17,255 bases of DNA, taken from Octopus sinensis (lineage: Eukaryota). Positions within the stretch are counted from its first letter, which is position 1. Every line of letters starts with the position of its first letter. Shown piece by piece: positions 1 to 15,029 of the stretch. The notes under the pieces were generated by a model, which saw only the letters and a list, made by a program, of their open reading frames with translations, searched no databases and was not told where the DNA came from. The translations under genes and the position numbers were made by a program. The stretch covers positions 1 through 17,255 of the forward strand of contig NW_021824925.1 of assembly GCF_006345805.1 (NCBI RefSeq), in the 5' to 3' direction.

Positions 1-247
1 AGATACTAATTTAATAGTATATTTATTCAACACCAAGTGGCCTAGTGCTACGAGAAACCTGGATTATTATATATTTTATAACATATTATAATATTTTACA
101 AAATAAATATAAGAGAGTGGTCAATATATTGCTCACTCTTGCACCAGTTAATCCAAAAGGTTTCAACCACGAAGATACATGTTTCCCATGAAAGCCAGTA
201 CGACTGTTAGCTCACACGGACAGGGCAAGTAAAAAATAACAAAAATA

Positions 248-342
248 CAGATTATTTTGGGACAATTGTTTCGCTATTAATGAATATATGTAATATTACT
301 TACAAAAAAATCCATTTGTAGCTCGTCAGCCAAGACTATCTG
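248..342 (-). ncRNA. Type I hammerhead ribozyme, array copy 1
   Basis: Minus strand: CAGAU-AGUC-UUGG (stem I 5') CUGACGA GCUA...UAGC (stem II, G10.1-C11.1) GAAA C-AAUU-G U C (stem III, GUC cleavage triplet) CCAA-AAUA-AUCUG (stem I 3'). All conserved core nucleotides are present. Predicted cut between 261 and 260. Confidence 0.9.
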
Positions 343-777
343 GATGAAATCCACTCAATCACACGCCAGATTTTACCATAACGATAAATAACGCGTGTGG
401 TTCAATTGATTACATCCGACGTTATAATTCAAATGCCCCAACCAACAGCGCGCCAAACTTTCACGGAAAACAAATACAGCATTTAGAAATAAATGCAGCA
501 TAATTATAATTATTAATAAGGGTGAGAGAATTAGATACTAATTTAATAGTATATTTATTCAACACCAAGTGGCCTAGTGCTACGAGAAACCTGGATTTTA
601 TAATATTTTATAACATATTATAATATTGTTACAAAATAAATATAAGAGAGTGGTCAATATATGCTCACTCTAGCACCAGTTAATCAAAAGGTTTCAACCA
701 CGAAGATACATGTTCCCATGAAAGCCAGTACGACTGTTAGCTCACACGGACAGGGCAAGTAAAAAATAACAAAAATA

Positions 778-873
778 CAGATTATTTTGGGACAATTGTT
801 TCGCTATTAATGAATTATATGTAATATTACTTACAAAAAAATCCATTTGTAGCTCGTCAGCCAAGACTATCTG
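778..873 (-). ncRNA. Type I hammerhead ribozyme, array copy 2
   Basis: Same core and stems as copy 1, intact. Predicted cut 791/790. Confidence 0.9.
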
Positions 874-1312
874 GATGAAATCTACTCAATCACACGCCAG
901 ATTTTACCATAACGATAAATACGCGTGTGGTTCAATTGATTACATCCGACGTTATAATTCAAATGCCCCAACCAACAGCGCGCCAAACTTTCACGGAAAA
1001 CAAATACAGCATTTAGAAATAAATGCAGCATAATTATAATTAATTAATAAGGGTGAGAGAATTAGATACTAATTTAATAGTATATTTATTCAACACCAAG
1101 TGGCCTAGTGCTACGAGAAACCTGGATTATTATAATATTTTATAACATATTATAATATTTTTACAAAATAAATATAAGAGAGTGGTCAATATATTGCTCA
1201 CTCTAGCACCAGTTAATCCAAAAGGTTTCAACCACGAAGATACATGTTTCCCATGAAAGCCAGTACGACTGTAAGCTCACACGGACAGGGCAAGTAAAAA
1301 ATAACAAAAATA

Positions 1313-1408
1313 CAGATTATTTTGGGACAATTGTTTCGCTATTAATGAATTATATGTAATATTACTTACAAAAAAATCCATTTGTAGCTCATCAGCCAAG
1401 ACTATCTG
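1313..1408 (-). ncRNA. Type I hammerhead ribozyme, array copy 3 (CUGAUGA variant)
   Basis: Plus strand GCTCATCAGCC gives CUGAUGA; the change falls on the freely variable position 7. Predicted cut 1326/1325. Confidence 0.9.
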
Positions 1409-1840
1409 GATGAAATCCACTCAATCACACGCCAGATTTTACCATAACGATAAATACGCGTGTGGTTCAATTGATTACATCCGACGTTATAATTCAAATG
1501 CCCCAACCAACAGCGCGCCAAACTTTCACGGAAAACAAATACAGCATTTAGAAATAAATGCAGCATAATTATAATTAATTAATAAGGGTGAGAGAATTAG
1601 ATACTAATTTAATAGTATATTTATTCAACACCAAGTGGCCTAGTGCTACGAGAAACCTGGATTATTATATTTTATACATATTATAATATTTTTACAAAAT
1701 AAATATAAGAGAGTGGTCAATTATTGCTCACTCTAGCACAGTAATCCAAAAGGTTTCAACCACGAAGATACATGTTTCCCATGAAAGCCAGTATGACTGT
1801 TAGCTCACACGGACAGGGCAAGTAAAAAATAACAAAAATA

Positions 1841-1936
1841 CAGATTATTTTGGGACAATTGTTTCGCTATTAATGAATTATATGTAATATTACTTACAAA
1901 AAAATCCATTTGTAGCTCGTCAGCCAAGACTATCTG
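1841..1936 (-). ncRNA. Type I hammerhead ribozyme, array copy 4
   Basis: Intact core and stems. Predicted cut 1854/1853. Confidence 0.9.
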
Positions 1937-2364
1937 GATGAAATCCACTCAATCACACGCCAGATTTTACCATAACGATAAATACGCGTGTGGTTCAATT
2001 GATTACATCCGACGTTATAATTCAAATGCTCCAACCAACAGCGCGCCAAACTTTCACGGAAAACAAATACTAGCATTTAGAATAAATGCAGCATAATTAT
2101 AATTAATTAATAAGGGTGAGAGAATTAGATACTAATTTAGTATATTTATTCAACACCAAGTGGCCTAGTGCTACGAGAAACCTGGATTATTATAATATTT
2201 TATAACATATTATAATATTTTTACAAAAATATAAGAGGTGGTCAATATTGCTCACTCTAGCACAGTTAATCCAAAAGGTTTCAACCACGAAGATACATGT
2301 TTCCCATGAAAGCCAGTACGACTGTTAGCTCACACGACAGGGCAAATAAAAAATAACAAAAATA

Positions 2365-2459
2365 CAGATTATTTTGGGACAATTGTTTCGCTATTAATGA
2401 ATTATATGTAATATTACTTACAAAAAAATCCATTTGTAGCTCTCAGCCAAGACTATCTG
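2365..2459 (-). ncRNA. Type I hammerhead ribozyme, array copy 5 (core lacks N7: CUGA-GA)
   Basis: Plus strand GCTCTCAGCC has one base missing from the CUGANGA box; the rest is intact. Either an inactive copy or a sequencing deletion, since this unit has many 1-bp deletions. Confidence 0.7.
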
Positions 2460-2894
2460 GATGAAATCCACTCAATCACACGCCAGATTTTACCATAACG
2501 ATAAATACGCGTGTGGTTCAATTGATTACATCCGACGTTATAATTCAAATGCCCCAACCAACAGCGCGCCAAACTTTCACGGAAAACAATACAGCATTTA
2601 GAAATAAATGCAGCATAATTATAATTAATTAATAAGGGTGAGAGAATTAGATACTAATTTAATAGTAATTTATTCAACACCAAGTGGCCTAGTGCTACGA
2701 GAAACCTGGATTTATTAATAATATTATCAACATTTATAATATTTTTACAAAATAAATTTAAGAGAGTGGTCAATATATTGCTCACTCTAGCACAGTTAAT
2801 CCAAAAGGTTTCAACCACGAAGATACATGTTTCCCATGAAAGCCAGTACGACTTTAGCTCACACGGACAGGGCAAGTAAAAAATAACAAAAATA

Positions 2895-2988
2895 CAGATT
2901 ATTTTGGGACAATTGTTTCGCTATTAATGAATTATATGTAATTACTTACAAAAAAATCCATTTGTAGCTCGTCAGCCAAGACTATCTG
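2895..2988 (-). ncRNA. Type I hammerhead ribozyme, array copy 6
   Basis: Intact core; 2-bp deletion only in the distal part of stem-loop II. Predicted cut 2908/2907. Confidence 0.88.
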
Positions 2989-3422
2989 GATGAAATCCAC
3001 TCAATCACACGCCAGATTTTACCATAACGATAAATACCGTGTGGTTCAATTGATTACATCCGACGTTATAATTCAATGCCCCAACCAACAGCGCGCCAAA
3101 CTTTCACGGAAAACAAATACCGCATTAGAAATAAATGCAGCATAATTATAATTAATTAATAAGGGTGAGAGAATTAGATACTAATTTAATAGTATATTTA
3201 TTCAACACCAAGTGGCCTAGTGCTACGAGAAACCTGGATTATTATAATATTTTATAACATATTATAATATTTTTACAAAATAAATATAAGAGAGTGGTCA
3301 ATATATGGCTCACTCTTGCACCAGTTAATCCAAAAGGTTTCAACCACGAAGATACATTTTCCCATGAAAGCCAGTACGACTGTTAGCTCACACGACAGGG
3401 CAAGTAAAAAATAACAAAAATA

Positions 3423-3518
3423 CAGATTATTTTGGGACAATTGTTTCGCTATTAATGAATTATATGTAATATTACTTACAAAAAAATCCATTTGTAGCTC
3501 GTCAGCCAAGACTATCTG
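3423..3518 (-). ncRNA. Type I hammerhead ribozyme, array copy 7
   Basis: Intact core and stems. Predicted cut 3436/3435. Confidence 0.9.
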
Positions 3519-3957
3519 GATGAAATCCACTCAATCACACGCCAGATTTTACCATAACGATAAATACGCGCGTGTGGTTCAATTGATTACATCCGACGTT
3601 ATAATTCAAATGCCCCAACCAACAGCGCGCCAAACTTTCACGGAAAACAAATACTCATTTAGAAATAAATGCAGCATAATTATAATTAATTAATAAGGGT
3701 GAGAGAATTAGATACTAATTTAATAGTATATTTATTCAACACCAAGTGGCCTAGTGCTACGAGAAACCTGGATTATTATAATATTTTATAACATATTATA
3801 ATATTTTTACAAAATAAATATAAGAGAGTGGTCAATATATTGCTCACTCTAGCACCAGTTAATCCAAAAGGTTTCAACCACGAAGATACATGTTTCCCAT
3901 GAAAGCCAGTACGACTGTAGCTCACACGGACAGGGCAAGTAAAAAATAACAAAAATA

Positions 3958-4053
3958 CAGATTATTTTGGGACAATTGTTTCGCTATTAATGAATTATAT
4001 GTAATATTACTTACAAAAAAATCCATTTGTAGCTCGTCAGCCAAGACTATCTG
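3958..4053 (-). ncRNA. Type I hammerhead ribozyme, array copy 8
   Basis: Intact core and stems; the array ends 35 bp upstream of it in RNA sense. Predicted cut 3971/3970. Confidence 0.9.
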
Positions 4054-4086
4054 GATGAAATCCACTCAATCACACGCCAGATTTTA

Positions 4087-4148
4087 CCGTGTGAGCTACA
4101 GTCGTACTGGCTTTCATGGGAAACATTTATTAATGAATTATATGTAAT
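4087..4148. other. Array-end junction made of templated fragments (40-bp inverted copy + 21-bp direct copy of unit sequence)
   Basis: 4087-4126 is the exact reverse complement of 3890-3929 and shares the GACTGTAGC 1-bp deletion unique to copy 8. 4128-4148 equals 3985-4005. CC microhomology at 4087-4088. Confidence 0.9.
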
Positions 4149-4150
4149 TT

Positions 4151-4176
4151 GTGCCTTTCGAAACACGTGTAGAATG
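4151..4176 (+). ncRNA. Possible 3' half of a minimal (Penelope-type) hammerhead, 5' half missing
   Basis: GTGCCTTTC-GAAA-C-ACGT-G-T-A: GAAA box, palindromic stem III ACACGUGU and GUA triplet. No CUGANGA box upstream because the array junction lies there. Confidence 0.35.
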
Positions 4177-4387
4177 AAATAAAACGATTTCTGTTCAATC
4201 TGCGTTCAGCTCCATTTCTTCAATTCACCAATAATGTTTTAATTTCAATTATCCGCACCAACGCACGGTTGCAACGCCAGATGGTTGTACCTCCAACCGT
4301 GCTGTTCACTGCTGTGATTTTTGCTACTAAGGTATCGGTTAAACTTTTGATTAATCTACTACAAGATTATTCATCTTTCTATTTCAC

Positions 4388-5125
4388 ATATATATATAAT
4401 ACGTAATATATATTATATATTATATATATACGTATATATATATATAATATATATACGTATATATATATATATATATATATATATACGTATATATATATAT
4501 ATATATAACGTATATATATATATAATATATATATACGTATATATATATATAGATATATATATAGATATACGTATATATAAGATATATATACGTATATATA
4601 TATATATATATATTATACGTATATATTATATATATATATATACGTATATTATATATATATATATACGTATATATATATATATATATACGTATATATATAG
4701 ATATATATACGTATATATATATATATTATATATACGTATATATATATATATATATATATACGTATATATATATATATATTATATACGTATATATATATAT
4801 ATATATATACATACGTATATATATATATATACATACGTATATATATAATATACATACGTATATATTATATATACATACGTAATATATATATATACATACG
4901 TATATATATTATATATTAGATACGTATATATATATATATAATATATTAACATATATATATATATATATACGTATATATATATATACGTATATACGTATAT
5001 ATACATATATATATATATACGTATATATATATACGTATATATATATATATACGTATATTATATATATACATATACATATATATATATACGTATATATATT
5101 ATACATATACATACATATATATATG

Positions 5126-5172
<47 letters not shown>

Positions 5173-5200
5173 GTATATATATATATCTATATATATATAC

Positions 5201-5248
<48 letters not shown>

Positions 5249-5284
5249 TATATACGTATATAATATATATATATATATATATAC

Positions 5285-5330
<46 letters not shown>

Positions 5331-5558
5331 GTATATATATATACATATATATATATACGTATATATATATATACATATATATTATTATATACGTATATAT
5401 ATACATATACGTATATAATATATACATATATATATATACGTATATATATATATATACGTATATATATATATATATATACGTTATATATATATATACGTAT
5501 ATATATATATATATATACGTATATAATATAATATACGTATATTATATATATATATACG

Positions 5559-5590
<32 letters not shown>

Positions 5591-5595
5591 CGTAT

Positions 5596-5629
<34 letters not shown>

Positions 5630-5825
5630 CGTATATATATATATATTATATATACGTATATATATATATACATATACATATATATATATATATGTATATG
5701 TATATATATATATACATATACATATATATATATATGTATATACATATACATATATATATATATATATATAATATATATATATATATATAATGTATATATA
5801 TGTATATATATATATGTATATATAT
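4388..5825. repeat. (TA)n microsatellite field punctuated by CG (TACGTA) and, distally, CA/TG
   Basis: Directly visible; TACGTA recurs roughly every 15-30 bp from ~4400 to ~5660. Confidence 0.97.
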
Positions 5826-5888
5826 ATAATAGTTATCGCCATACTAATATGGCATTCTTATAAAAATTAGTATGGCGATAACTATTAT
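5826..5888. repeat. Perfect 23-bp inverted repeat with 17-nt spacer; probable end or core of a small non-autonomous DNA element (5826-~5947)
   Basis: ATAATAGTTATCGCCATACTAAT (5826-5848) and ATTAGTATGGCGATAACTATTAT (5866-5888) are exact reverse complements. The element identity is inference only. Confidence 0.9.
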
Positions 5889-5947
5889 TTTCCGGAAACG
5901 CTGCCGTTGTTCTCTTTTAGAGAGACTTAGTAATTTTAATATTTCTA

Positions 5948-5948
5948 T

Positions 5949-5983
<35 letters not shown>

Positions 5984-6007
5984 GTATATATATATATACA
6001 TATATAC

Positions 6008-6079
<72 letters not shown>

Positions 6080-6104
6080 TACATATATATATATATATAT
6101 ATGT

Positions 6105-6138
<34 letters not shown>

Positions 6139-6439
6139 ATATATTATATTGTGTATGTGTATTATATACATGCTGTATGTGTGTATTGTATGTGTATATA
6201 TATGCTAGGTGTATTTGTGTGATATTTATATTATGTATGTATGTGTGTGTGTGTGTGTGTGTTGTGTGTGTATGTGTGTTATATATGTGTGTATATTATA
6301 TATGAATACGTTATATTTGTGTGCTGTGTGTATATATTATATATGTGGGTGCGTTGTGTGTGTGTGTGTGTTCTGTGTGTGTGTGTGTGTGTGTTGTGTG
6401 TATGTGGTGTGTGTTTGTATACTATGTGTGTGTGTGTTG

Positions 6440-6471
<32 letters not shown>

Positions 6472-6478
6472 GTGTGTG
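5948..6478. repeat. Compound (TA)n/(TATG)n/(TG)n microsatellite
   Basis: Directly visible. Confidence 0.95.
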
Positions 6479-6717
6479 ACAAACAGACGCTGTCTGACCA
6501 GCAGGCATGGACACATCTATTCACACCTGCATACTAACCTCCTGATAACCCCAAAATCATTGATGCTTAAAGGGGAAGTATACACCACACTGGGTACATC
6601 TTTTTTTCTCTCAATTCAACCTTTCTGCTAAAACAAACAGGTCAGTAAAAACATATTCTCGCCTTCAACTTAAAATATTCTGAGATGTATAAAAAATCCA
6701 TTTTAATTTTTCCTGTC

Positions 6718-6779
6718 AAAAGACTGTATATATATACCAAAGACTGTATATATATATACCAAAGACTGTATATATATAC
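6718..6779. repeat. 3 tandem copies of CAAAGACTG(TA)nC (20-22 bp)
   Basis: Directly visible at 6718, 6738 and 6760. Confidence 0.9.
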
Positions 6780-6985
6780 ATGTAATGTGACAATTTGCGA
6801 CAACCAATAATTAACGCAACCAAATTTCCAATAATATATTTGTTTTATCCTTTTCTGCCAAATTTTCCCAAATATTCTCATCACACTATTGAACTTCTTT
6901 GTTACCAAACACTATATTTATACATGTAATGTGACAATTATGTATAAAAAAACATTTTTGAATTCATAATATCCAATGTGACAAT

Positions 6986-7097
6986 ATATATATACATATA
7001 TATATATACATATATATACATATATATATACATATATATATATATACTATATATATATACATATATATATATTATATATATATATAGACATATATAC

Positions 7098-7133
<36 letters not shown>

Positions 7134-7143
7134 CATATATATA

Positions 7144-7176
<33 letters not shown>

Positions 7177-7232
7177 CATATATATTATATATATTATACA
7201 TTATATATATATATATATATACATATATATAC

Positions 7233-7263
<31 letters not shown>

Positions 7264-7264
7264 C

Positions 7265-7329
<65 letters not shown>

Positions 7330-7340
7330 CATATATATAT

Positions 7341-7416
<76 letters not shown>

Positions 7417-7528
7417 TAATATATATATAATATATATATATATATTATATATATATATATATATATCTAATATATATATTATATATATATATATACTATA
7501 TATATATATATAATATATATATATATAT

Positions 7529-7593
<65 letters not shown>

Positions 7594-7635
7594 TATACAT
7601 ATATATATTATACATATACACATATATATATATCA

Positions 7636-7676
<41 letters not shown>

Positions 7677-7715
7677 CTATATATATATATATATATATCT
7701 ACATATTATATATAT

Positions 7716-7755
<40 letters not shown>

Positions 7756-7878
7756 TAATATATATATATAACTATATATATATATATATATACATATATA
7801 CAATATATATATATATATATATATATACAATCTATCTATATATATATAATACTATATATATATATATATATATTTACA

Positions 7879-7910
<32 letters not shown>

Positions 7911-8050
7911 TTACATATATATGTATAATATATATATATATATTTACATATATATGTATATATATATATATATAAAATATAGATATATATATATTTACAT
8001 ATATATGTATATATATAGTATATATTATATATAACATATATATGTATATG
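6986..8050. repeat. (TA)n microsatellite field punctuated by CA (TACATA)
   Basis: Directly visible; no CG interruptions seen, unlike 4388-5660. Confidence 0.97.
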
Positions 8051-8256: not shown

Positions 8257-8296
<40 letters not shown>

Positions 8297-8318
8297 CATG
8301 TATATATATATATATATA

Positions 8319-8360
<42 letters not shown>

Positions 8361-8395
8361 ATATATATATATGCATGTATATATATGTATATCTA
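8257..8395. repeat. (TA)n microsatellite
   Basis: Directly visible; it replaces the extreme 5' end of the Penelope-like ORF. Confidence 0.95.
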
Positions 8396-8965
8396 TGTTA
8401 TATAAATTTTATTAATAATATTAAGGATTTTGTTTCTAGAATAAATGGAAAGCCTACTATTATAACTATAATATATCTAATTTTAATGATAGTATGAACG
8501 ATAATAATTTTACTTCTAATTTTAAATCTAAAGAAGAACCCCCATATAATAGAGACTTACAGATCCTAGAAGATAATATTTGGAAGGTGGTGAAAAACAC
8601 TAAATTTCATAAATACCCAAACAGAAATAATGAATATTCAAGAAATATAGCTATTAGAATTAAAGAAATGAGAAATATGGATGGTATTATTGTACAATCA
8701 GATAAAACTAGAAATCTATATAAATTGGATGTTAAATTATATGATAACCTCTTAGAGAAAGAGATAATTAAAAAATATAAAATTTTTCTCTAAATTAGCC
8801 ATGATAAACTATGAGTTAGATAATAAAACTGAACCTTATGTACCTATGCACCCTAGAATTACTCTGAAAGACCATAAAGATAATTTTTATTCAGACCCTA
8901 AAGTTAGATTAATTTGTCCATGTAAATCTGACCTTGGTAAATTGAGTTAACTTATTTTAGATAAA
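8396..8965 (+). pseudogene. Penelope-like ORF, N-terminal region and start of RT (two frameshifts, one stop)
   Basis: ORF 8494-8793 plus ITLKDHK at 8858-8878 in a shifted frame; TAA in KLS*LILDK. Confidence 0.85.
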
Positions 8966-9454
8966 TCTATATATATAAAACTGTAGTTGTGTGAGTGTCT
9001 GTCCCCTTCGATTTAGATTCCTAACTACTCCCACATTTTGCGGTGCAGTTTAACTAAATTCGGGTATCTTATGGTCGTGATTCATATCGAGGCCGTCTGG
9101 GTATTAGCGCGCGTCTACGATGAGTCTACGATTTTAAAAATAATTTAACATCATTTTTTATTCCATTTTAATGCATAATTTTTCGTGTGTCGATGGCGGC
9201 GGAGTTGGCATCCATGGTCACACCTGCACCTGTTTGCTTCTCCCCCTTCTTCCCTCCCTCGTGAAGCTGTGGGGAAGGGAGTGTAAGGAAATCAACGTCG
9301 TAAAGCATTGTCAAGGAGACCAGCGTTCTTTTAGAACAACGACTTCATGGCTAGAAGACACCAAAACAGAAATGGCTAAGGGAAGTAACTCTCTAAAAAT
9401 GCTTATATAGTTATTTCCCTTACAAACCCGAGCAACGCCGGGCGATACTGCTAG
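8966..9454 (+). mobile_element. Non-autonomous Helitron (489 bp)
   Basis: 5' TCTATATATATAAAA; 3' hairpin CCCG-A-GC-AAC-GC-CGGG (9427-9442) followed 8 nt later by CTAG; inserted between A8965 and T9455 with no TSD. Removing it restores the host RT frame (LILDK|YINKLN). Confidence 0.93.
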
Positions 9455-10222
9455 TATATTAATAAATTAAATAAGCTTAACTACCTAAAATTATGGTATA
9501 GTAATAATAATACTTTAAATTGGTTTAATAATATTAAAGAAAAAAATCGATATAAATTTATTCAAATAGATATAGATAATTATTATTCTTCTGTTAATGA
9601 AATTGTGTTTAATAAGGCCCTTATATTTGCAATGAATAAAGTGGCAATGACTTTTGAAGAGGTTAATGTAATCAAAATGGCTAGGAAATCGTTTATTAGA
9701 TACAAAAATAAATTATGGGCTAGGAAGGACTATTTTGATATACCTATGGGGGCACCCGATTCTGCACAAGCTACGGATTTGGTAGGTATTTATCTATTAT
9801 CTGAACTTCAATTAGAAAATTTAAAAATAGAGGGTGGTTTATATAGGAATGACCTTTTATTAATTACTAAGAATTGCACTAATAGGAACCTAGAATTATA
9901 TAAGAAAAAACTTTATAGTTTCTTTAAAAGATATGGTTTTAGTATTACTATTTATAATGAGAATTTTAATGTTAATTATTTAGATGTTAATTTTAATCTA
10001 ATTACGGGTAAAACACAACCATATCATAAACTTAATGAAAACCTTAGATATATAAATGTTAATAGTAATCACCCACCATCAATTAAAAAATTGTTGATTA
10101 ATAATATAAGTAAGCGTATATCATTACTTTCTTATGATTTAGAGATTTTTAATAAACATGCATCTTATTACAATAAGGTCCTAAGAGAGGCAGGTTATAA
10201 TAGTAATAAAATTTTTTATTAA
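9455..10222 (+). pseudogene. Penelope-like reverse transcriptase core and thumb
   Basis: Open frame containing FIQIDI, FDIPMG, GGLYRNDLL (catalytic DD changed to ND), NYLDVNFNL and NSNHPPSI. Confidence 0.9.
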
Positions 10223-10520
10223 AAATAAAGATAAAAATATTAATAATAATTATAATAATAATATTAGTAGTAATTTTAGTAATTATAAAAATAAAAATAA
10301 AATTTAAAATAAGACAAACTTTAATAATTCATTAAATGTTAATTATAATTATAAATTTAAATTTAATAATATTATAAAGAAATATAATAATAGTAATGGT
10401 AATAATAATGATAATGGTAATAATAATGATGGTAATAATAATATGATTAATTATAATAATGATAATAATGAGAAGAATAAGAATAATAATGATAGTGATA
10501 ATAATAATAAGAAGAAAAAT
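10223..10520. repeat. (AAT)n-rich low-complexity tract inside the Penelope-like element
   Basis: Directly visible; lies between the thumb and the IWLIVPY motif. Confidence 0.85.
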
Positions 10521-11206
10521 AAGAATAAAATTTGGTTAATTGTTCCTTATGGTGCTCAGGTTAAAACGAACATTATTAAAGAGATTTTAGATATTATTGA
10601 ACAATTTATTAATGATAATAGTAAATATAAAAAATTTCTCTAGTTATAACTTTGAAGTAGGTTATTCTACCACTATATGGTAGTAACATTATTTCTTCTT
10701 TAACAAATTAAACTGAATAATTTTTATAAAAATAAATTTTATAATAATACCAATAAATAAAGACAAGACACTCATTAACTGTACATGTAGAGATAAAACT
10801 AAGTTCAAATTTAATAATAAATGTGATATAAACGATGTAGTGTATAAATGTATAGTTACATTACTTAATGAGAATAATAGGAATAATAATAACTTAAACA
10901 CAATATATATAGGGTCCACTTCCTCTAAAATAAAATTAATAATCACACAGCATATGCATTCATTTAAAAATAAAAACCTAATTAACTCAATAAGACTTAG
11001 CAAGTATATATGGGGACTTAAATCCCAGTACTAAGTATGATTTAAGGTGGGAAATAATTAGTAAGGCTAAATCATATAGTATAGGAGGAAATTATTATTA
11101 TTTATGTTCTAATGAGTTTAAAGAAATTTTATTTTATGAGCATAATAATTTAGTGTATACTCTGGATGAGCATAAAATAAAATGCAGACACAGGTTACTT
11201 TACTTA
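10521..11206 (+). pseudogene. Penelope-like linker and GIY-YIG endonuclease (frameshifted)
   Basis: KIWLIVPYGAQVKTNI; NCTCRDK...KCDINDVVYKC; IYIGSTS; HSFKN; LSKYIW; WEIISKAKSY; KCRHR. Confidence 0.82.
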
Positions 11207-12685
11207 CCGTATTTGACGGCATATTAGACGCACCCTCATTTCAGCGGGTCAAATTCAGGAAAAAAAGTTTTAAGTGTATTTAACATATATTGTTGAAAGC
11301 AGTCTAGCAGCACATTACAAAAGCAGAAAAAATTGCTGTATAAAGCAAGCATACAAAGGAAAGCATACAAATTACAATAGTAATCATCTTTATCATCTTT
11401 TTAACCAGAAAACTCTTCATCATCTTCTACACCAGAAAAGTCTTCATCATCTTCACAACAAGGAACATCTTCATCACTCTGCTGAAATTAATGTCTTCAA
11501 TATGCATCATCTTTGAGCCATCAAGGCATTGCTAATGCCACACTCTTAAAAGCCTTCACAATGATTTCAGGCCTAACATCATCCCAAGATTTCTTCACCC
11601 ACTCACACTTCAGCAATGGTGGGCCGCTTCATTCTTCCTGTGGGTGTGAGGACATGATGTGGCTCTGCCATCCACTTGTTCCAATGTTCACGCATGTTCT
11701 GCTTAAATGGCTTATTCACAGACACATCTAAAGGCTGCAATTGGCTCGTCAGTCCACCAGGAATGACAGCTAACTGCATTTTCAATTCTCCCACCCTTTT
11801 TTTAATGGCTTCAGTTCTATGTGCTCTAAACTGATCCCAAACCAGAAGAGAAGGTTTTCTTAATAGTCCACCAGGACGCCCTTGACCATATATTTTGTAA
11901 CCACAGTTTCATTCCATTTTCGTCCATCCAGCCTTTTTGTGAACATGAACTAGACACTTTGGAATTTTATCCTTAGGCTGAGTTTTTCTCTTAAATATCA
12001 AAAGAGGTGACAGTTTTATGCCATCAGCACAACAACAGGCCAGAGCTACTGTATAGTGGGTCATTTCGTGGCCAGTGGTTTTTATCAAAACCATTTTAGA
12101 CCCTTTGACACTCACAGTCTTGTTGGATGGTACATCAAATGTGAGTGGAACTTCGTCCATATTCCCTATTTGGCCCAGTTCAAAACAAGTTTTCTTTCTT
12201 GCATTTATAACAAATCTATGAAAATCTAATATTTTTTCTTCATAATCAGCAGGCATTTTTTGTGCAATGGATGTTTTTGTACGCATTGATAAACCCTTCC
12301 GTTTCATAAACCTGTAACACCAACCTTCTGTTCCTGCAAAGTTCTGTATCCCTCATTGTTCTGCTACTCTCATGAATTATCATTTTGGTAGATACACTTC
12401 TCCCTGATTGCTTTGATTTTTATGATAATTCGTATTTTAAAGTAATAATACTGGTAATAATAATAATAATAATAATAATACTAGCAATAAAATAATGATG
12501 CATGAGTATGGAAAATATCATTAAGGCATTAGCGTAGGTAGAAATACTTATCGTAAGCTAGGTTAGTGAGCGTCTGGGAGAAGATTAGCCTACGGGAGGG
12601 TCTTGACTTTGCATATTAGACGCAGGGCGATTTTTTGAGCCAAACTTTTTGGAAAAAAGTGTGTCCTATATGACGTCAAATACGG
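11207..12685 (-). mobile_element. pogo-family (Tigger/POGK-like) DNA transposon, defective, 1479 bp
   Basis: Imperfect ~27-bp TIRs CCGTATTTGACG(G/T)CATAT(TA/AG)GAC(G/A)CAC at both ends; TA TSD at 11205-11206 and 12686-12687. Confidence 0.92.
11380..12410 (-). pseudogene. pogo DDD transposase remnant (CENP-B-type HTH + DDE_1 domain + acidic tail), frameshifted and N-terminally deleted
   Basis: VSTKMIIHE...GWCYRFMKRKGL; NMDEVPL; LLVWDQFRAH; VIPGGLTSQLQPLDVSVNKPFK; WVKKSWDDV; 27-bp repeats encoding EDDE(D/E)FSG. Confidence 0.9.
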
Positions 12686-13234
12686 TATATAATAAATTTC
12701 TAGATAAATAATGTATATATCTTAACCCTTTTTAGTTCCTTATTTGTTGATTTATGTATTAGTATTAATCTAAAATTTAGTATGTGATTTATAATACTTA
12801 TTACATGATTTTATATGCTATATTAAATAATGTAATATTATAATAATTTTATAAATATATTATTTTATAGTAGTGTTGTGTATCTAATTCTTTATGAGGT
12901 TTTGTATTAGTGTATTATAGTTATTAAAGGTTCTTTATTTACTTAAAGTTAGTTTATATTTAGTTTTATTACTAAATATTTAATGGTTTTATTGAATATA
13001 ATTTTAGGAAGGTTTTATTTTTGAATGTATAGGACAATTTTCTTTTCTTTATGTAATATTTTTTATAATGATAATTTATTCAATTATAGAACAATGTATT
13101 TAATCTATTGATAAATTAATTTACCTATTTAATTAGATTAATTTTATACTTATTATTGATTAATATTTATTTTGAGTATTAATAATATGATATATATATA
13201 TATATATAATATATATTATATACATATATATATA

Positions 13235-13455
13235 CAGTGGCGACCAAAATGTTCAGAACGGCATTGTTTTCGTCAGAAATAGATATAATTTTTTATGAAA
13301 GTTGTTTTAGATTCTATAATTTTCACAGACAATAAATACGATATTATTGTTATTGCCTGAGATTTTTGGTGTAATTGAGAGGATAATACAAAAGTTATGG
13401 ATGATTTAGGGATTTACTGCAAAACCCATGGCGGCCAAAATGATCAGAACAGTTG
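13235..13455 (+). repeat. Left Tc1 TIR (221 bp) with outer and inner direct repeats
   Basis: GGCGACCAAAATGTTCAGAAC (outer) and GGCGGCCAAAATGATCAGAAC (inner). Confidence 0.92.
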
Positions 13456-13526
13456 CTTTTACTCCATGTTTTAGTATATTTAACCGGCGAACTCTAAGAA
13501 TATTTGCCATGTACTTTGTTAATATA

Positions 13527-14524
13527 ATGCCACTGGCTCCATTACCAATTCGTCAGCAGATTATTAAGCTTCGAAGGAATGATAATTTAAGTATTGGATC
13601 TATTGCAAAGATTGTTAACAAGTCAAAAAGTGTTGTACATGGTATTCTTAAGGTAAACGATGATTGTGATTCGTGTGAAGCAAGAAAGTTTACAGGTAGG
13701 CCAAGAAAAATGACCAAGAGAGAAGATCGTGCTATGGTAAAGTTGGTTAAAAAGAACAGATTTAAAACTGCTGCTGCTGTTTCTCGGAAAATGAGCATTG
13801 TATTGAAGAAAACTTTATCTCAAAAAACTGTCTCTCGTCGTTTAGTTGAACATGACCTACAAGCAAGAGCACCTGCAGTGAAGCCACTGATCAGCTCCAA
13901 GAATAAAAAGTGTCGTCTTACCTTTGCAACCGAACATGTGTTGTGGTTTCAAGAAAAATGGCAAACGGTGCATTTCAGTGATGAATCTAAGTTTATGTTA
14001 TTTGGCTCAGATGGGAAACGGTACGTTCGTAGAAAAGTAGGTGAAAAATTGTCGCCTAAGTGCCTTAAGACTAGTGTTAAATTCGGTGGAGGAAGTGTCA
14101 TGGTTTGGGGGATGATATCTGGGGATGATATCTGGAGATGGTGTGGGCCCTTTGGTGCGATTACATGGAAAGGTAAATGCAGGAGTTTATAAACAACTTG
14201 TAAAAAATCATGTTTTGCCTGTGCTGAGAAATTCAACTAAGCGACCACCCATATTCATGCCCCATGAACTTCCTCAAGGCTGAAAAGGTTATTGTTATGG
14301 ATTGGCCTGCTCAAAGCCCAGATCTCAATCCTATTGAAAATGTATGGAATATTCTAGGAGGACGTTTGAAAGCCAGAAATCCTAAAACAACTGAGCAATT
14401 ATGGAATACCCTTCAGGAAGAATGGAAAAAGATCACCCAGCAAGAAATTGAAAATTTAATTTCCTCATGCAGTCGAAGATGTCAGAGTGTGATTGAAGCT
14501 AAAGGGCTTCACACTAAATATTAA
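13527..14524 (+). pseudogene. Tc1 DD34E transposase pseudogene
   Basis: Paired-like HTH, GRPRK, FSDESKF, VMVWG, WPAQSPDLNPIEN, terminal TKY*. A 13-bp tandem duplication (14108-14133) shifts the frame and the second catalytic Asp (QDNAP..H motif) is missing at ~14260. Confidence 0.93.
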
Positions 14525-14570
14525 ATAATTCTAGTATTCTCTGTCATTTTTGATTATTTTGTTATTTTTT

Positions 14571-14794
14571 CAACCGTTCTGATCATTTTGGCCGCCATGG
14601 GTTTTGCAGTAAATCACTAAATCATCCATAACTTTTGTATTATCCTATCAAATTACACTAAAATCTCAGACAATAACAATTAAAATTGTATTTATTGTCT
14701 GTGAAAATTATAGAATATAAAACTACTTTGATAAAAACTTATACTTACTTTTCTGACGAAAACAATGTCGTTCTGAACATTTTGGCCGCAACTG
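14571..14794 (-). repeat. Right Tc1 TIR (224 bp)
   Basis: Reverse complement of 13235-13455 with scattered substitutions. Confidence 0.92.
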
Positions 14795-15029
14795 TATATC
14801 TTATACTAGAGTTAAGTTTATATTTTGTTATATTTCTGTTATAAATTAAATTCATTTATTTGTATGTAATTTCTTTATATTTGAAATAGATTTGTTTAGA
14901 TGTTTATTTAATCAATTTTTATTTAATATAGACATATAGATTAGTAAGATAGAATAAATGGATAAAACTAAATGTTTACCTGTATGTTTGTATGGAAGTA
15001 TGAATGTAGGCATTTATATACGTATCTAT

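What the first reader, a model, noticed from the sequence alone, without database searches (positions are those of the whole stretch)
1..4088. A ~530-bp tandem satellite in which every unit encodes a hammerhead ribozyme: candidate new retrozyme / circular RNA family
Seen: on the minus strand each unit has the full hammerhead core (CUGACGA...GAAA...GUC) with correctly pairing stems I, II and III, at 248, 778, 1313, 1841, 2365, 2895, 3423 and 3958. Established: tandem type I hammerhead repeats (newt satellite 2, Schistosoma Sm-alpha, cricket pDo500, metazoan non-LTR retrozymes) are transcribed as concatemers that self-cleave to monomers, which can circularise. Inference: read-through transcription here would release monomers of 524-535 nt (consensus ~535). 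As I recall, that is longer than most described metazoan non-LTR retrozymes, so this may be an undescribed family.
Basis: partly seen in the sequence, partly recalled or inferred. Interest (0 to 1): 0.92.

Follow-up and report, generated by a model that had tools for sequence, protein, structure and literature searches.

The report
Hammerhead retrozyme array, Penelope-style insertion
The 4-kb repeat is one arm of a young, non-coding mobile element (an animal "retrozyme") whose ~530-base units each carry a hammerhead self-cleaving RNA motif. Its layout, and its direct junction to the tail of an active Penelope-like retrotransposon, point to that kind of element as what copies it, so it is a new member of a known class, not a new kind or a satellite.

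Summary
Window 1-4088 is a head-to-tail array of 523-535-bp units. Each unit carries a type I hammerhead (HHR) on the minus strand, at exactly the stated positions. Seven of the eight cores are intact; the one at 2365-2460 has lost core base N7.

It is not a satellite. The genome (2.72 Gb, probably an octopus) holds at least 1,314 intact HHRs of this family, in short arrays on many chromosomes. These arrays lie inside (TA)n microsatellites. Most consist of two head-to-head arms with variable 5' truncation and two fixed outward 3' ends. That is the insertion signature of Penelope-like elements (PLEs).

In this window the array's inner end is joined through a scrambled 56-nt junction to the last 245 nt of the 3'UTR of a very young, HHR-bearing, divergent PLE.

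The element fits the known class of non-LTR retrozymes. Its length (530 nt) lies inside the published range of 51-972 bp, so length does not argue for novelty. I found no paper on cephalopod retrozymes. However, this scan has already reported the same family (s1-105052) and many sister families in this genome.

Self-cleavage, circular RNA and expression remain untested.

The parts
1..4088 (-). One arm of a retrozyme insertion. It holds a partial unit (1-261, cut by the scaffold start), seven full units of 523-535 bp, and a 5'-truncated inner unit (3972-4088 = unit 415-530). The outward 3' end lies beyond the scaffold start.
   Evidence: Unit BLAST map. Direct-repeat families with 523-535 bp spacing. 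No ORF over 85 aa. GC 0.32.
248..343 (-). Hammerhead 1: core CUGACGA, cleavage after C261.
   Evidence: Rfam RF00163 at 27.5 bits over the full model. The minimum-energy fold gives stems I and II, z = -3.15.
778..874 (-). Hammerhead 2: CUGACGA, cleavage after C791.
1313..1409 (-). Hammerhead 3: CUGAUGA (N7 = U), cleavage after C1326.
1841..1937 (-). Hammerhead 4: CUGACGA, cleavage after C1854.
2365..2460 (-). Hammerhead 5, defective: CUGA-GA. N7 is deleted, which shifts G8 and A9.
2895..2989 (-). Hammerhead 6: CUGACGA, with a 2-nt deletion in the stem II tip. Cleavage after C2908.
3423..3519 (-). Hammerhead 7: CUGACGA, cleavage after C3436.
3958..4054 (-). Hammerhead 8: CUGACGA, cleavage after C3971.
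4087..4143 (.). Scrambled inner junction. 4087-4130 is unit 43-86 in the opposite (+) orientation. It is followed by about 21 nt of the stem II region in minus orientation, which overlaps the next element by the 5-nt microhomology GTAAT.
4144..4388 (+). Second arm: a 5'-truncated copy (the last 245 nt) of the 3'UTR of a divergent Penelope-like element. It starts inside that element's own hammerhead (the GAAAC-ACGU-GUA half is present) and ends in (TA)n.
   Evidence: At least 40 genomic copies are 100% identical over the 241-nt query (window 4150-4390), out of 528 candidates. Other copies continue upstream through a complete HHR and, about 0.9 kb further up, the C-terminal endonuclease of the ORF. 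L051 shows a tandem copy whose ORF starts 40 nt after this tail.
4388..8049 (.). (TA)n-rich microsatellite tract, the target-type sequence in which both arms' family members end.
   Evidence: TRF row 4388-8049, period 2. GC 0.05-0.2. All sampled insertions of the family abut (TA)n.

Best explanation
Window 1-4088 is one arm of a single insertion of a non-autonomous, non-coding retroelement of the non-LTR retrozyme class.

Shown:
- Each ~530-nt unit encodes on the minus strand a type I hammerhead with an intact core, a 12-bp interrupted stem I, a long stem II (4 bp, an internal loop, then about 13 more bp) and a 2-bp stem III capped by the palindromic loop AAUU.
- The family is young. It is dispersed in short arrays inside (TA)n, usually as two head-to-head arms with variable 5' truncation.
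- The outward 3' ends fall at two fixed UA-rich points of the unit, about 287 ('A') and about 160-193 ('B').
- Here the second arm is the 3' tail of a recently active, hammerhead-bearing Penelope-like element.

Inferred:
- Arrays are transcribed, and the hammerheads cut after GUC. They may act singly or as dimers, because ACAAUUGU is self-complementary. Monomers can then be ligated into circles.
- A PLE reverse transcriptase/GIY-YIG endonuclease nicks (TA)n. The exposed TA 3' ends anneal to the UA-rich sites of the RNA and prime reverse transcription around the circle (or along a multimer), giving tandem cDNA units.
- Both ends of the break prime, giving two arms whose truncated 5' ends are joined by template switching or microhomology.

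Confidence in the class and in Penelope-type insertion is about 0.85. Confidence in the whole chain, including the circular template, is about 0.6.
For: HHR anatomy and significance. Genome-wide enrichment: 2007 vs 14 and 1314 vs 0.

Selection on the ribozyme:
- Subfamilies that are 70-90% identical over the unit keep every core base, while N7 is C, U, G or A.
- Stems stay paired in 95% of cells, against 31-42% when partners are slid. Four pairs changed on both sides, three of them in stem I.
- Unrelated HHR families in the same genome share the architecture with different helices.

Monomer fold: z = -5.9.

Mobility:
- At least 259 scored matches out of 909 candidates on more than 25 large contigs, at 95-98% identity.
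- All sampled ends lie in (TA)n, at two fixed points.
- 12 of 12 two-armed insertions with both ends visible have one A end and one B end.
- 19 of 19 mixed-orientation clusters listed on contig 1 are ordered minus then plus, i.e. head-to-head.
- Substitution divergence within an insertion has a median of 0.0037. Between opposite arms the mean is 0.0048, against 0.010-0.012 between insertions. This indicates one template per event.

PLE link:
- The tandem/inverted, 5'-truncated, microsatellite-biased layout is the published PLE signature (Craig et al. 2021, PMC8557442).
- PLE ORFs (RVT_1 + GIY-YIG) are abundant here, and the two full-length copies examined (L043, L044) abut (TA)n.
- The window's own chimeric junction joins the array to a PLE 3'UTR.
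Against: - No cleavage, circle or transcript was seen.
- The Rfam score is below the gathering threshold.
- The covariation rests on essentially one deep split between subfamilies.
- The unit shares no detectable sequence with any sampled PLE UTR, so no partner is identified by homology.
- The chimeric junction is a single case among about 17 insertions examined. It could instead be a retrozyme insertion into a pre-existing PLE tail. The scaffold ends before the other side can be checked.
- The strict pairing of A and B ends has no tested explanation. A predicted A:B helix was not found.
Confidence: 0.62

Rival explanations
1. Same element and same PLE-type insertion, but the template is a linear multimeric read-through transcript of an existing array, not a circle. 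The hammerhead only trims RNA, or is a passenger inherited from a PLE terminal repeat.
For: Units within an insertion are near-identical, which fits either template. Arrays of up to about 17 units exist as possible sources. Craig et al. note that PLEs without HHRs proliferate well. Li et al. 2026 derive retrozymes from PLE terminal repeats.
Against: The HHR core is kept across subfamilies that are 25-30% diverged, with only N7 varying. 46 of 52 sampled full units keep the core. One single-arm copy starts and ends at the same A site, i.e. it is exactly one unit long, as expected from one turn of a circle.
Confidence: 0.25
2. A classical satellite DNA, expanded locally by unequal crossing-over or replication slippage. 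The hammerhead-like motif is a relic without function.
For: Head-to-tail units of uniform length in the window. Units within the window array differ by about 1.9%, as an old array might.
Against: Hundreds of short arrays lie on many chromosomes, with the same two termini, always in (TA)n, and with head-to-head arms that share their variants. The family-wide divergence of about 1% indicates recent dispersal.
Confidence: 0.04
3. The element is mobilised by a LINE or another non-PLE reverse transcriptase, with twin priming giving the inverted arms.
For: Twin priming by LINE-1 is known to make 5' inversions (established knowledge). LINEs are present in this genome according to earlier scan notes, which I did not test.
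Against: There is no poly(A) or LINE-like tail. The targets are (TA)n, as for the PLE copies examined here. The head-to-head, two-3'-end layout is the rule rather than the exception. The array is physically joined to a PLE tail. HHR-bearing PLEs with the same ribozyme architecture coexist.
Confidence: 0.08

Closest known systems
Metazoan non-LTR retrozymes (Cervera and de la Pena 2020, PMC7229834; coral, mussel, axolotl)
   Same: Non-coding, low-GC tandem units, each with a type I hammerhead. Short multimers are dispersed in the genome, the monomer is highly self-paired, and PLEs coexist in the same genome.
   Different: The unit is 523-535 nt, against the ~170-400 nt described there (though inside the 51-972 bp range of Li et al. 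2026). Stem II is unusually long, about 47 nt between its basal 4 bp. The host appears to be a cephalopod, for which I found no published retrozyme. RNA forms were not examined here.
Penelope-like elements and their hammerheads (Cervera and de la Pena 2014, PMC4209133; Craig et al. 2021, PMC8557442)
   Same: Partial tandems, an adjacent inverted 5'-truncated copy, a microsatellite (TA)n target bias, and type I HHRs with a short helix III and a palindromic loop. Paired HHRs on opposite strands 100-700 bp apart are reported there too.
   Different: There is no ORF, so the element is non-autonomous. No sequence similarity to the sampled PLE UTRs was found. The units repeat many times rather than once as a pseudo-LTR.
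Newt satellite 2, Schistosoma Sm-alpha and cricket pDo500 hammerhead repeats
   Same: Tandem type I HHR repeats transcribed as multimers that self-cleave. This is known from the literature (summarised in PMC7229834) and was not tested here.
   Different: These are different sequence families with shorter units (~330 bp in newts). The newt helix III has 1 bp and needs dimers, whereas this one has 2 bp plus a tetraloop, as in invertebrate retrozymes.
Plant LTR retrozymes (Cervera et al. 2016, PMC4918200)
   Same: Non-autonomous elements proposed to spread through 600-800-nt hammerhead-processed circular RNAs.
   Different: Plant elements have type III HHRs in LTRs, a PBS and PPT, 4-bp TSDs and Gypsy partners. 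None of these features is present here.

Membership tests
Hammerhead ribozyme, type I (Rfam RF00163) | Conserved core CUGANGA ... GAAA ... UH, with a G10.1-C11.1 pair | tested here: met
   7 of 8 window units. The core is invariant and N7 varies among subfamilies.
Hammerhead ribozyme, type I (Rfam RF00163) | Three helices around the core, with helix I open (type I) | tested here: met
   Descriptor hits. 95% of cells are paired, with 4 double changes. The CM alignment spans model positions 1-45.
Hammerhead ribozyme, type I (Rfam RF00163) | Score at or above Rfam's gathering threshold (34 bits) | tested here: not met
   27.5 bits. The shortfall is due to a 38-nt insertion in stem II.
Hammerhead ribozyme, type I (Rfam RF00163) | Mg2+-dependent self-cleavage 3' of H17 | not testable with these tools
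   Needs in vitro transcription of monomer and dimer.
Non-LTR retrozyme | Tandem non-coding units, each with a type I HHR, low GC, and no LTR/PBS/PPT | tested here: met
   No tRNA-like part.
Non-LTR retrozyme | Dispersed multicopy insertions (a mobile element rather than a local satellite) | tested here: met
Non-LTR retrozyme | Expressed as linear and circular monomer RNAs | tested here: inconclusive
Penelope-like element (autonomous) | ORF with a reverse transcriptase and a GIY-YIG endonuclease | tested here: not met
   No ORF over 85 aa in the array, so the element is at most a non-autonomous dependant.
Penelope-like element (insertion signature) | Partial tandems, an adjacent inverted 5'-truncated copy, and a microsatellite target | tested here: met
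   compared with the description in PMC8557442.
Satellite DNA | Long homogeneous arrays at few loci, expanded by unequal exchange | tested here: not met
   Arrays have mostly 1-6 units (the longest seen has about 17) at hundreds of loci with fixed termini.

The most novel reading that the evidence does not exclude
The window preserves a single integration event in which a currently active, divergent Penelope-like lineage copied its own 3' tail from one end of a (TA)n break and a retrozyme RNA from the other end. This lineage has an RT plus a C-terminal GIY-YIG-like domain that Pfam does not recognise, and a hammerhead in its 3'UTR. Together with the strict rule of one 'A' end and one 'B' end per insertion, this would mean that both ends of the break prime on neighbouring UA-rich sites of the same circular RNA and run around it (twin-primed rolling-circle reverse transcription). 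That would be direct structural evidence for how, and by which partner, animal retrozymes are mobilised.
Probability: 0.3. Interest if true: 0.65.

Novelty: new member of a known kind. Interest (0 to 1): 0.4.

Why it matters
Retrozymes are the main home of hammerhead ribozymes in animal genomes, and they are a source of abundant small circular RNAs. How they move is still a hypothesis: PLEs are suspected from co-occurrence, shared HHRs and, in Xenopus, homology to PLE terminal repeats.

This family is very young and has hundreds of clean insertions. Its junctions therefore record the integration reaction:
- (TA)n targets;
- two fixed priming sites, always one of each per insertion;
- two arms made from one template;
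- here, a junction with the tail of an active PLE.

That makes the partner question and the circular-template question testable in a cephalopod. As an object, however, it is an ordinary member of a described class, and the scan has already met it repeatedly in this genome.

Tried and rejected
1. Rfam over the whole window at gathering, and over 1-4400 at E<=10, gave no hammerhead. The match appeared only when 136 nt were searched.
2. TRF cannot see periods above 500.
No read-level RNA evidence could be obtained.
4. Idea: the A and B sites pair with each other in the RNA and so explain the A/B rule. The circular minimum-energy fold leaves A unpaired and puts B in a local hairpin, so I rejected it.
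5. Idea: the arms arise by snap-back copying. The inner truncation points of the two arms differ in every retrozyme insertion, so I rejected it.
6. Looking for the partner by homology. The unit has no significant similarity to the canonical PLE (L043/L044), to ten other PLE loci, or to the divergent PLE's 3'UTR.
7. The window ORF 9605-10222 against the canonical PLE ORF gave only weak collinear matches (E 0.4-0.7). Its identity came instead from relatives.
The architecture statistics therefore rest on about 17 insertions plus the coordinate lists.
9. The look-up of encoding contigs for the PLE ORF found nothing on record. The host organism is not confirmed here: 'octopus' comes from earlier scan notes and from my memory of assembly statistics.
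10. No complex prediction, structure or fold-search jobs were run. They would not bear on the claim.
Full report
**The observation.** Window 1-4088 is a head-to-tail array. Direct-repeat families recur every 523-535 bp. Mapping one unit (window:262-791, minus strand) back on the window gives a partial unit at 1-261 (cut by the scaffold start), seven full units, and a 5'-truncated unit at 3972-4088, all on the minus strand and 96-100% identical. TRF missed the array because its longest period is 500.

On the minus strand each unit carries a hammerhead motif at 248-343, 778-874, 1313-1409, 1841-1937, 2365-2460, 2895-2989, 3423-3519 and 3958-4054. The scissile C lies 13 nt further in (261, 791, and so on).

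The hammerhead anatomy is:
- Stem I: 12 pairs interrupted by two mismatches.
- Core: CUGACGA.
- Stem II: GCUA/UAGC, a CA/AA internal loop, then about 13 further pairs.
- GAAA, then stem III: A-U and C-G capped by AAUU.
- GUC, followed by the cleavage site.

Six cores read CUGACGA and one reads CUGAUGA. The core at 2365-2460 has lost N7 and is broken. So the claim holds for seven of eight units.

**Is it more than chance?**
- A strict descriptor finds the seven intact motifs and none elsewhere in the window. It found none in 3000 simulated 4.1-kb sequences of the same dinucleotide make-up.
- In the whole 2.72-Gb genome, a loose HHR pattern gives 2007 matches against 14 for the reversed control.
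- The family-specific pattern gives 1314 matches against 0.
- Rfam found nothing at gathering or at E<=10 over 4.4 kb. When only 136 nt were searched, Hammerhead_1 aligned over its full model (27.5 bits, E 3.4e-5; gathering score 34), with a 38-nt insertion in stem II that explains the shortfall.
- The 111-nt region folds into stems I and II (z = -3.15).
- The whole monomer is strongly self-paired (z = -5.9).

**Selection on the ribozyme.** The genome holds subfamilies of the same element. Subfamily 'c' is about 82-90% identical to the window unit, and subfamily 'd' about 71-77% identical over the whole unit.
- In an alignment of eleven distinct hammerheads from these subfamilies, every core base is invariant except N7, which is C, U, G or A. 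N7 is the one core position known to be free.
- 95% of cells form standard pairs, against 31-42% when the partners are slid.
- Four pairs changed on both sides, three of them in stem I.
- This rests on essentially one deep split, so it is supportive rather than conclusive.
- Independently, unrelated HHR families in the same genome have the same architecture (long stem II, 2-bp stem III, palindromic tetraloop) with entirely different helices.
- Of 52 sampled full units, 46 keep the core pattern. Most of the defects are single-base indels.

**It is not a satellite.** A search of the genome with one unit gave at least 259 scored matches out of 909 candidates, on more than 25 large contigs, at 95-98% identity. 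Mapping the unit on about 17 independent loci shows short arrays, mostly of 1-6 units. The longest array, seen in the coordinate lists, has about 17 units.
- Most insertions consist of two arms in head-to-head orientation. The inner (5') ends are truncated at variable and unequal positions.
- The outward (3') ends fall at only two places in the unit: about 287 ('A', after ...TTAATTATA) and about 160-193 ('B', after ...TATTTATTT).
- In every case the element runs directly into (TA)n.
- All 12 two-armed insertions with both ends visible have one A end and one B end, never two of a kind. Either arm can be the longer one, and A falls on either side equally often.
- Among the places listed on contig 1, all 19 clusters with both orientations are ordered minus then plus.
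- Single-arm insertions also exist, flanked by the microsatellite on both sides. One is exactly one unit long, from the A site to the A site.
- Units within an insertion differ by a median of 0.37% in substitutions. Opposite arms differ by 0.48% on average, against 1.0-1.2% between insertions (only five insertions have full units in both arms). So both arms of an insertion come from one template.
- The window's own array is the most diverged internally (1.9%). It lies on a small unplaced scaffold, so age and assembly error cannot be separated.

**Comparison with the literature.** Partial tandems, an adjacent inverted 5'-truncated copy and an insertion bias for microsatellites, (TA)n among them, are the published signature of Penelope-like elements (Craig et al. 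2021, PMC8557442). Cervera and de la Pena (2014, PMC4209133) describe metazoan type I HHRs with a 1-2-bp helix III and a palindromic loop that can act as dimers in tandem transcripts. They also describe paired HHRs on opposite strands a few hundred bases apart. Here ACAAUUGU is self-complementary, so a trans helix III is possible.

Cervera and de la Pena (2020, PMC7229834) define non-LTR retrozymes: non-coding, low-GC tandem units with type I HHRs, expressed as ~170-400-nt linear and circular RNAs. They propose PLEs as mobilisers. Li, Clavereau and Pollet (2026 preprint) report consensus lengths of 51-972 bp and homology to PLE terminal repeats in Xenopus. The present element meets the structural definition.

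I found no paper describing retrozymes or HHR repeats in cephalopods. I did not confirm the host myself. Earlier notes of this scan call the genome an octopus, and the assembly statistics match my memory of one.

**PLEs in this genome.** A GIY-YIG search gave 5029 candidates, many inside 760-883-aa open frames. [quoted passage not shown] They are arranged as partial tandems, and their ends abut (TA)n. Several PLE families coexist. None of the sampled PLE loci shares detectable sequence with the retrozyme unit.

**The junction in this window.** The inner end of the array (unit position 415, at 4088) is followed by three pieces:
- 44 nt of unit 43-86 in the opposite orientation;
- about 21 nt of the stem II region in the original orientation;
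- from 4144, overlapping by GTAAT, a different sequence that runs to the (TA)n at 4388.

That 245-nt stretch has at least 40 copies that are 100% identical over the 241-nt query (window 4150-4390), out of 528 candidates. In other copies it continues upstream through a complete hammerhead (CUGAAGA, a long stem II, GAAAC-ACGU-GUA). About 0.9 kb further up is the end of an open frame.

The relatives of that frame are ~700-900-aa proteins (3673 hits at E<=1e-3). Pfam does not recognise them. Their core aligns with the canonical PLE reverse transcriptase (E 2e-4), and their C-terminus has a cysteine cluster and a weak GIY-YIG match (E 0.006). In L051 the tail is followed after 40 nt by the start of the next tandem copy's ORF.

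So the second arm in this window is the 5'-truncated 3' tail of a very young, hammerhead-bearing, divergent PLE, placed head-to-head with the retrozyme arm and ending in (TA)n. This is what a two-armed PLE-type insertion would look like if the two arms were copied from two different RNAs. It is one case among about 17. The alternative is a single-arm retrozyme insertion into a pre-existing PLE tail. That cannot be excluded, because the scaffold ends before the other side. It would, however, be the only insertion seen outside (TA)n.

**Mechanism.**
- Shown: the ribozyme anatomy and its conservation; the dispersal; the target; the two fixed 3' ends and their pairing; the one-template origin of both arms; and the junction with a PLE tail.
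- Inferred: transcription of arrays; cleavage after GUC; ligation to circles; priming by the TA 3' ends of an endonuclease-cut microsatellite on the two UA-rich sites of the RNA; repeated passage around a circular (or along a multimeric) template; and joining of the two cDNA 5' regions by template switching.
- The A/B rule suggests that the two ends of one break engage neighbouring sites on one RNA. A test of one version of this idea, an A:B helix, failed.

**Not obtained.** No RNA evidence was obtained. Runs whose contig sets are small enough to be transcriptomes hold 34-51% of the unit's words, in six studies and two organism labels, but the tool marks them only as guesses.

**Earlier notes of this scan.** The scan's earlier notes show that it has met this class hundreds of times in this genome, including the same ~535-nt family (s1-105052), with the same reading. 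I reached the reading before consulting them. They count as agreement, not as independent evidence.

**Verdict.** This is a real, nearly intact hammerhead array. It is a new cephalopod member of the known non-LTR retrozyme class, inserted Penelope-style, and it is not a satellite. Length gives no argument for a new family. The mechanistic by-products (the A/B end rule, the one-template arms and the chimeric junction with an active PLE) are the parts worth following.

Noticed in passing
window 4144-4388 (+); L047-L052: The last 245 nt of the 3'UTR of a divergent Penelope-like element. At least 40 genomic copies are 100% identical over the 241-nt query (window 4150-4390), out of 528 candidates, so the element was active very recently. 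Its own hammerhead (CUGAAGA ... GAAAC-ACGU-GUA, long stem II) lies about 300 nt from the 3' end.
   Followed up: yes
window 8521-11191 (+): A decayed, AT-rich copy of the same divergent PLE clade. It matches relatives P0003/P0008 over aa 62-745, in pieces. ORF 9605-10222 is 48% identical to the L051 copy (E 2e-64). Pfam finds nothing in it or in its full-length relatives, so this large RT + GIY-YIG-like family (3673 hits) seems to lack a Pfam model that detects it.
   Followed up: partly
window 11606-12352 (-): Fragment of a pogo/Tc5-type DDE transposase (PF03184 E 5e-13; weak HTH_Tnp_Tc5), broken by a stop.
   Followed up: partly
window about 13225-14810: A Tc1-like DNA transposon. It has roughly 50-bp terminal inverted repeats (94% identical) that end in ...CAGT next to TA, and an ORF at 13428-14192 with HTH_Tnp_Tc3_2 (E 1e-18). 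The CTGACGA words inside its inverted repeats are not hammerheads.
   Followed up: partly
window 4388-8049 and 8257-8404: A 3.6-kb (TA)n-rich tract, interrupted by GC-richer insertions around 5500-7000, one of them a repeat shared with L048. It looks like a hot spot that has collected several (TA)n-targeting elements.
   Followed up: no
L044:6150-6260 and L043 (minus strand) equivalent: The 3'UTR of the canonical PLE (RVT_1 + GIY-YIG) ends with a hammerhead-like stretch in which the core reads UUGAUAA, i.e. U3 and A8 in place of the C3-G8 pair. It is followed by a GGUUC/GAACC hairpin and GAAAC-AUGU-A. This could be a compensated core variant or a relic.
   Followed up: no
L003-L028, L041 (genome-wide family): Every two-armed insertion has one arm ending at unit ~287 and the other at ~160-193 (12 of 12). 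No explanation tested so far accounts for this strict pairing.
   Followed up: partly
L048:1258-1600 (oriented): An insertion of the divergent PLE tail forms a perfect palindrome: both arms are truncated at the same base. This is a snap-back type of junction, unlike the unequal arms of the retrozyme insertions.
   Followed up: no
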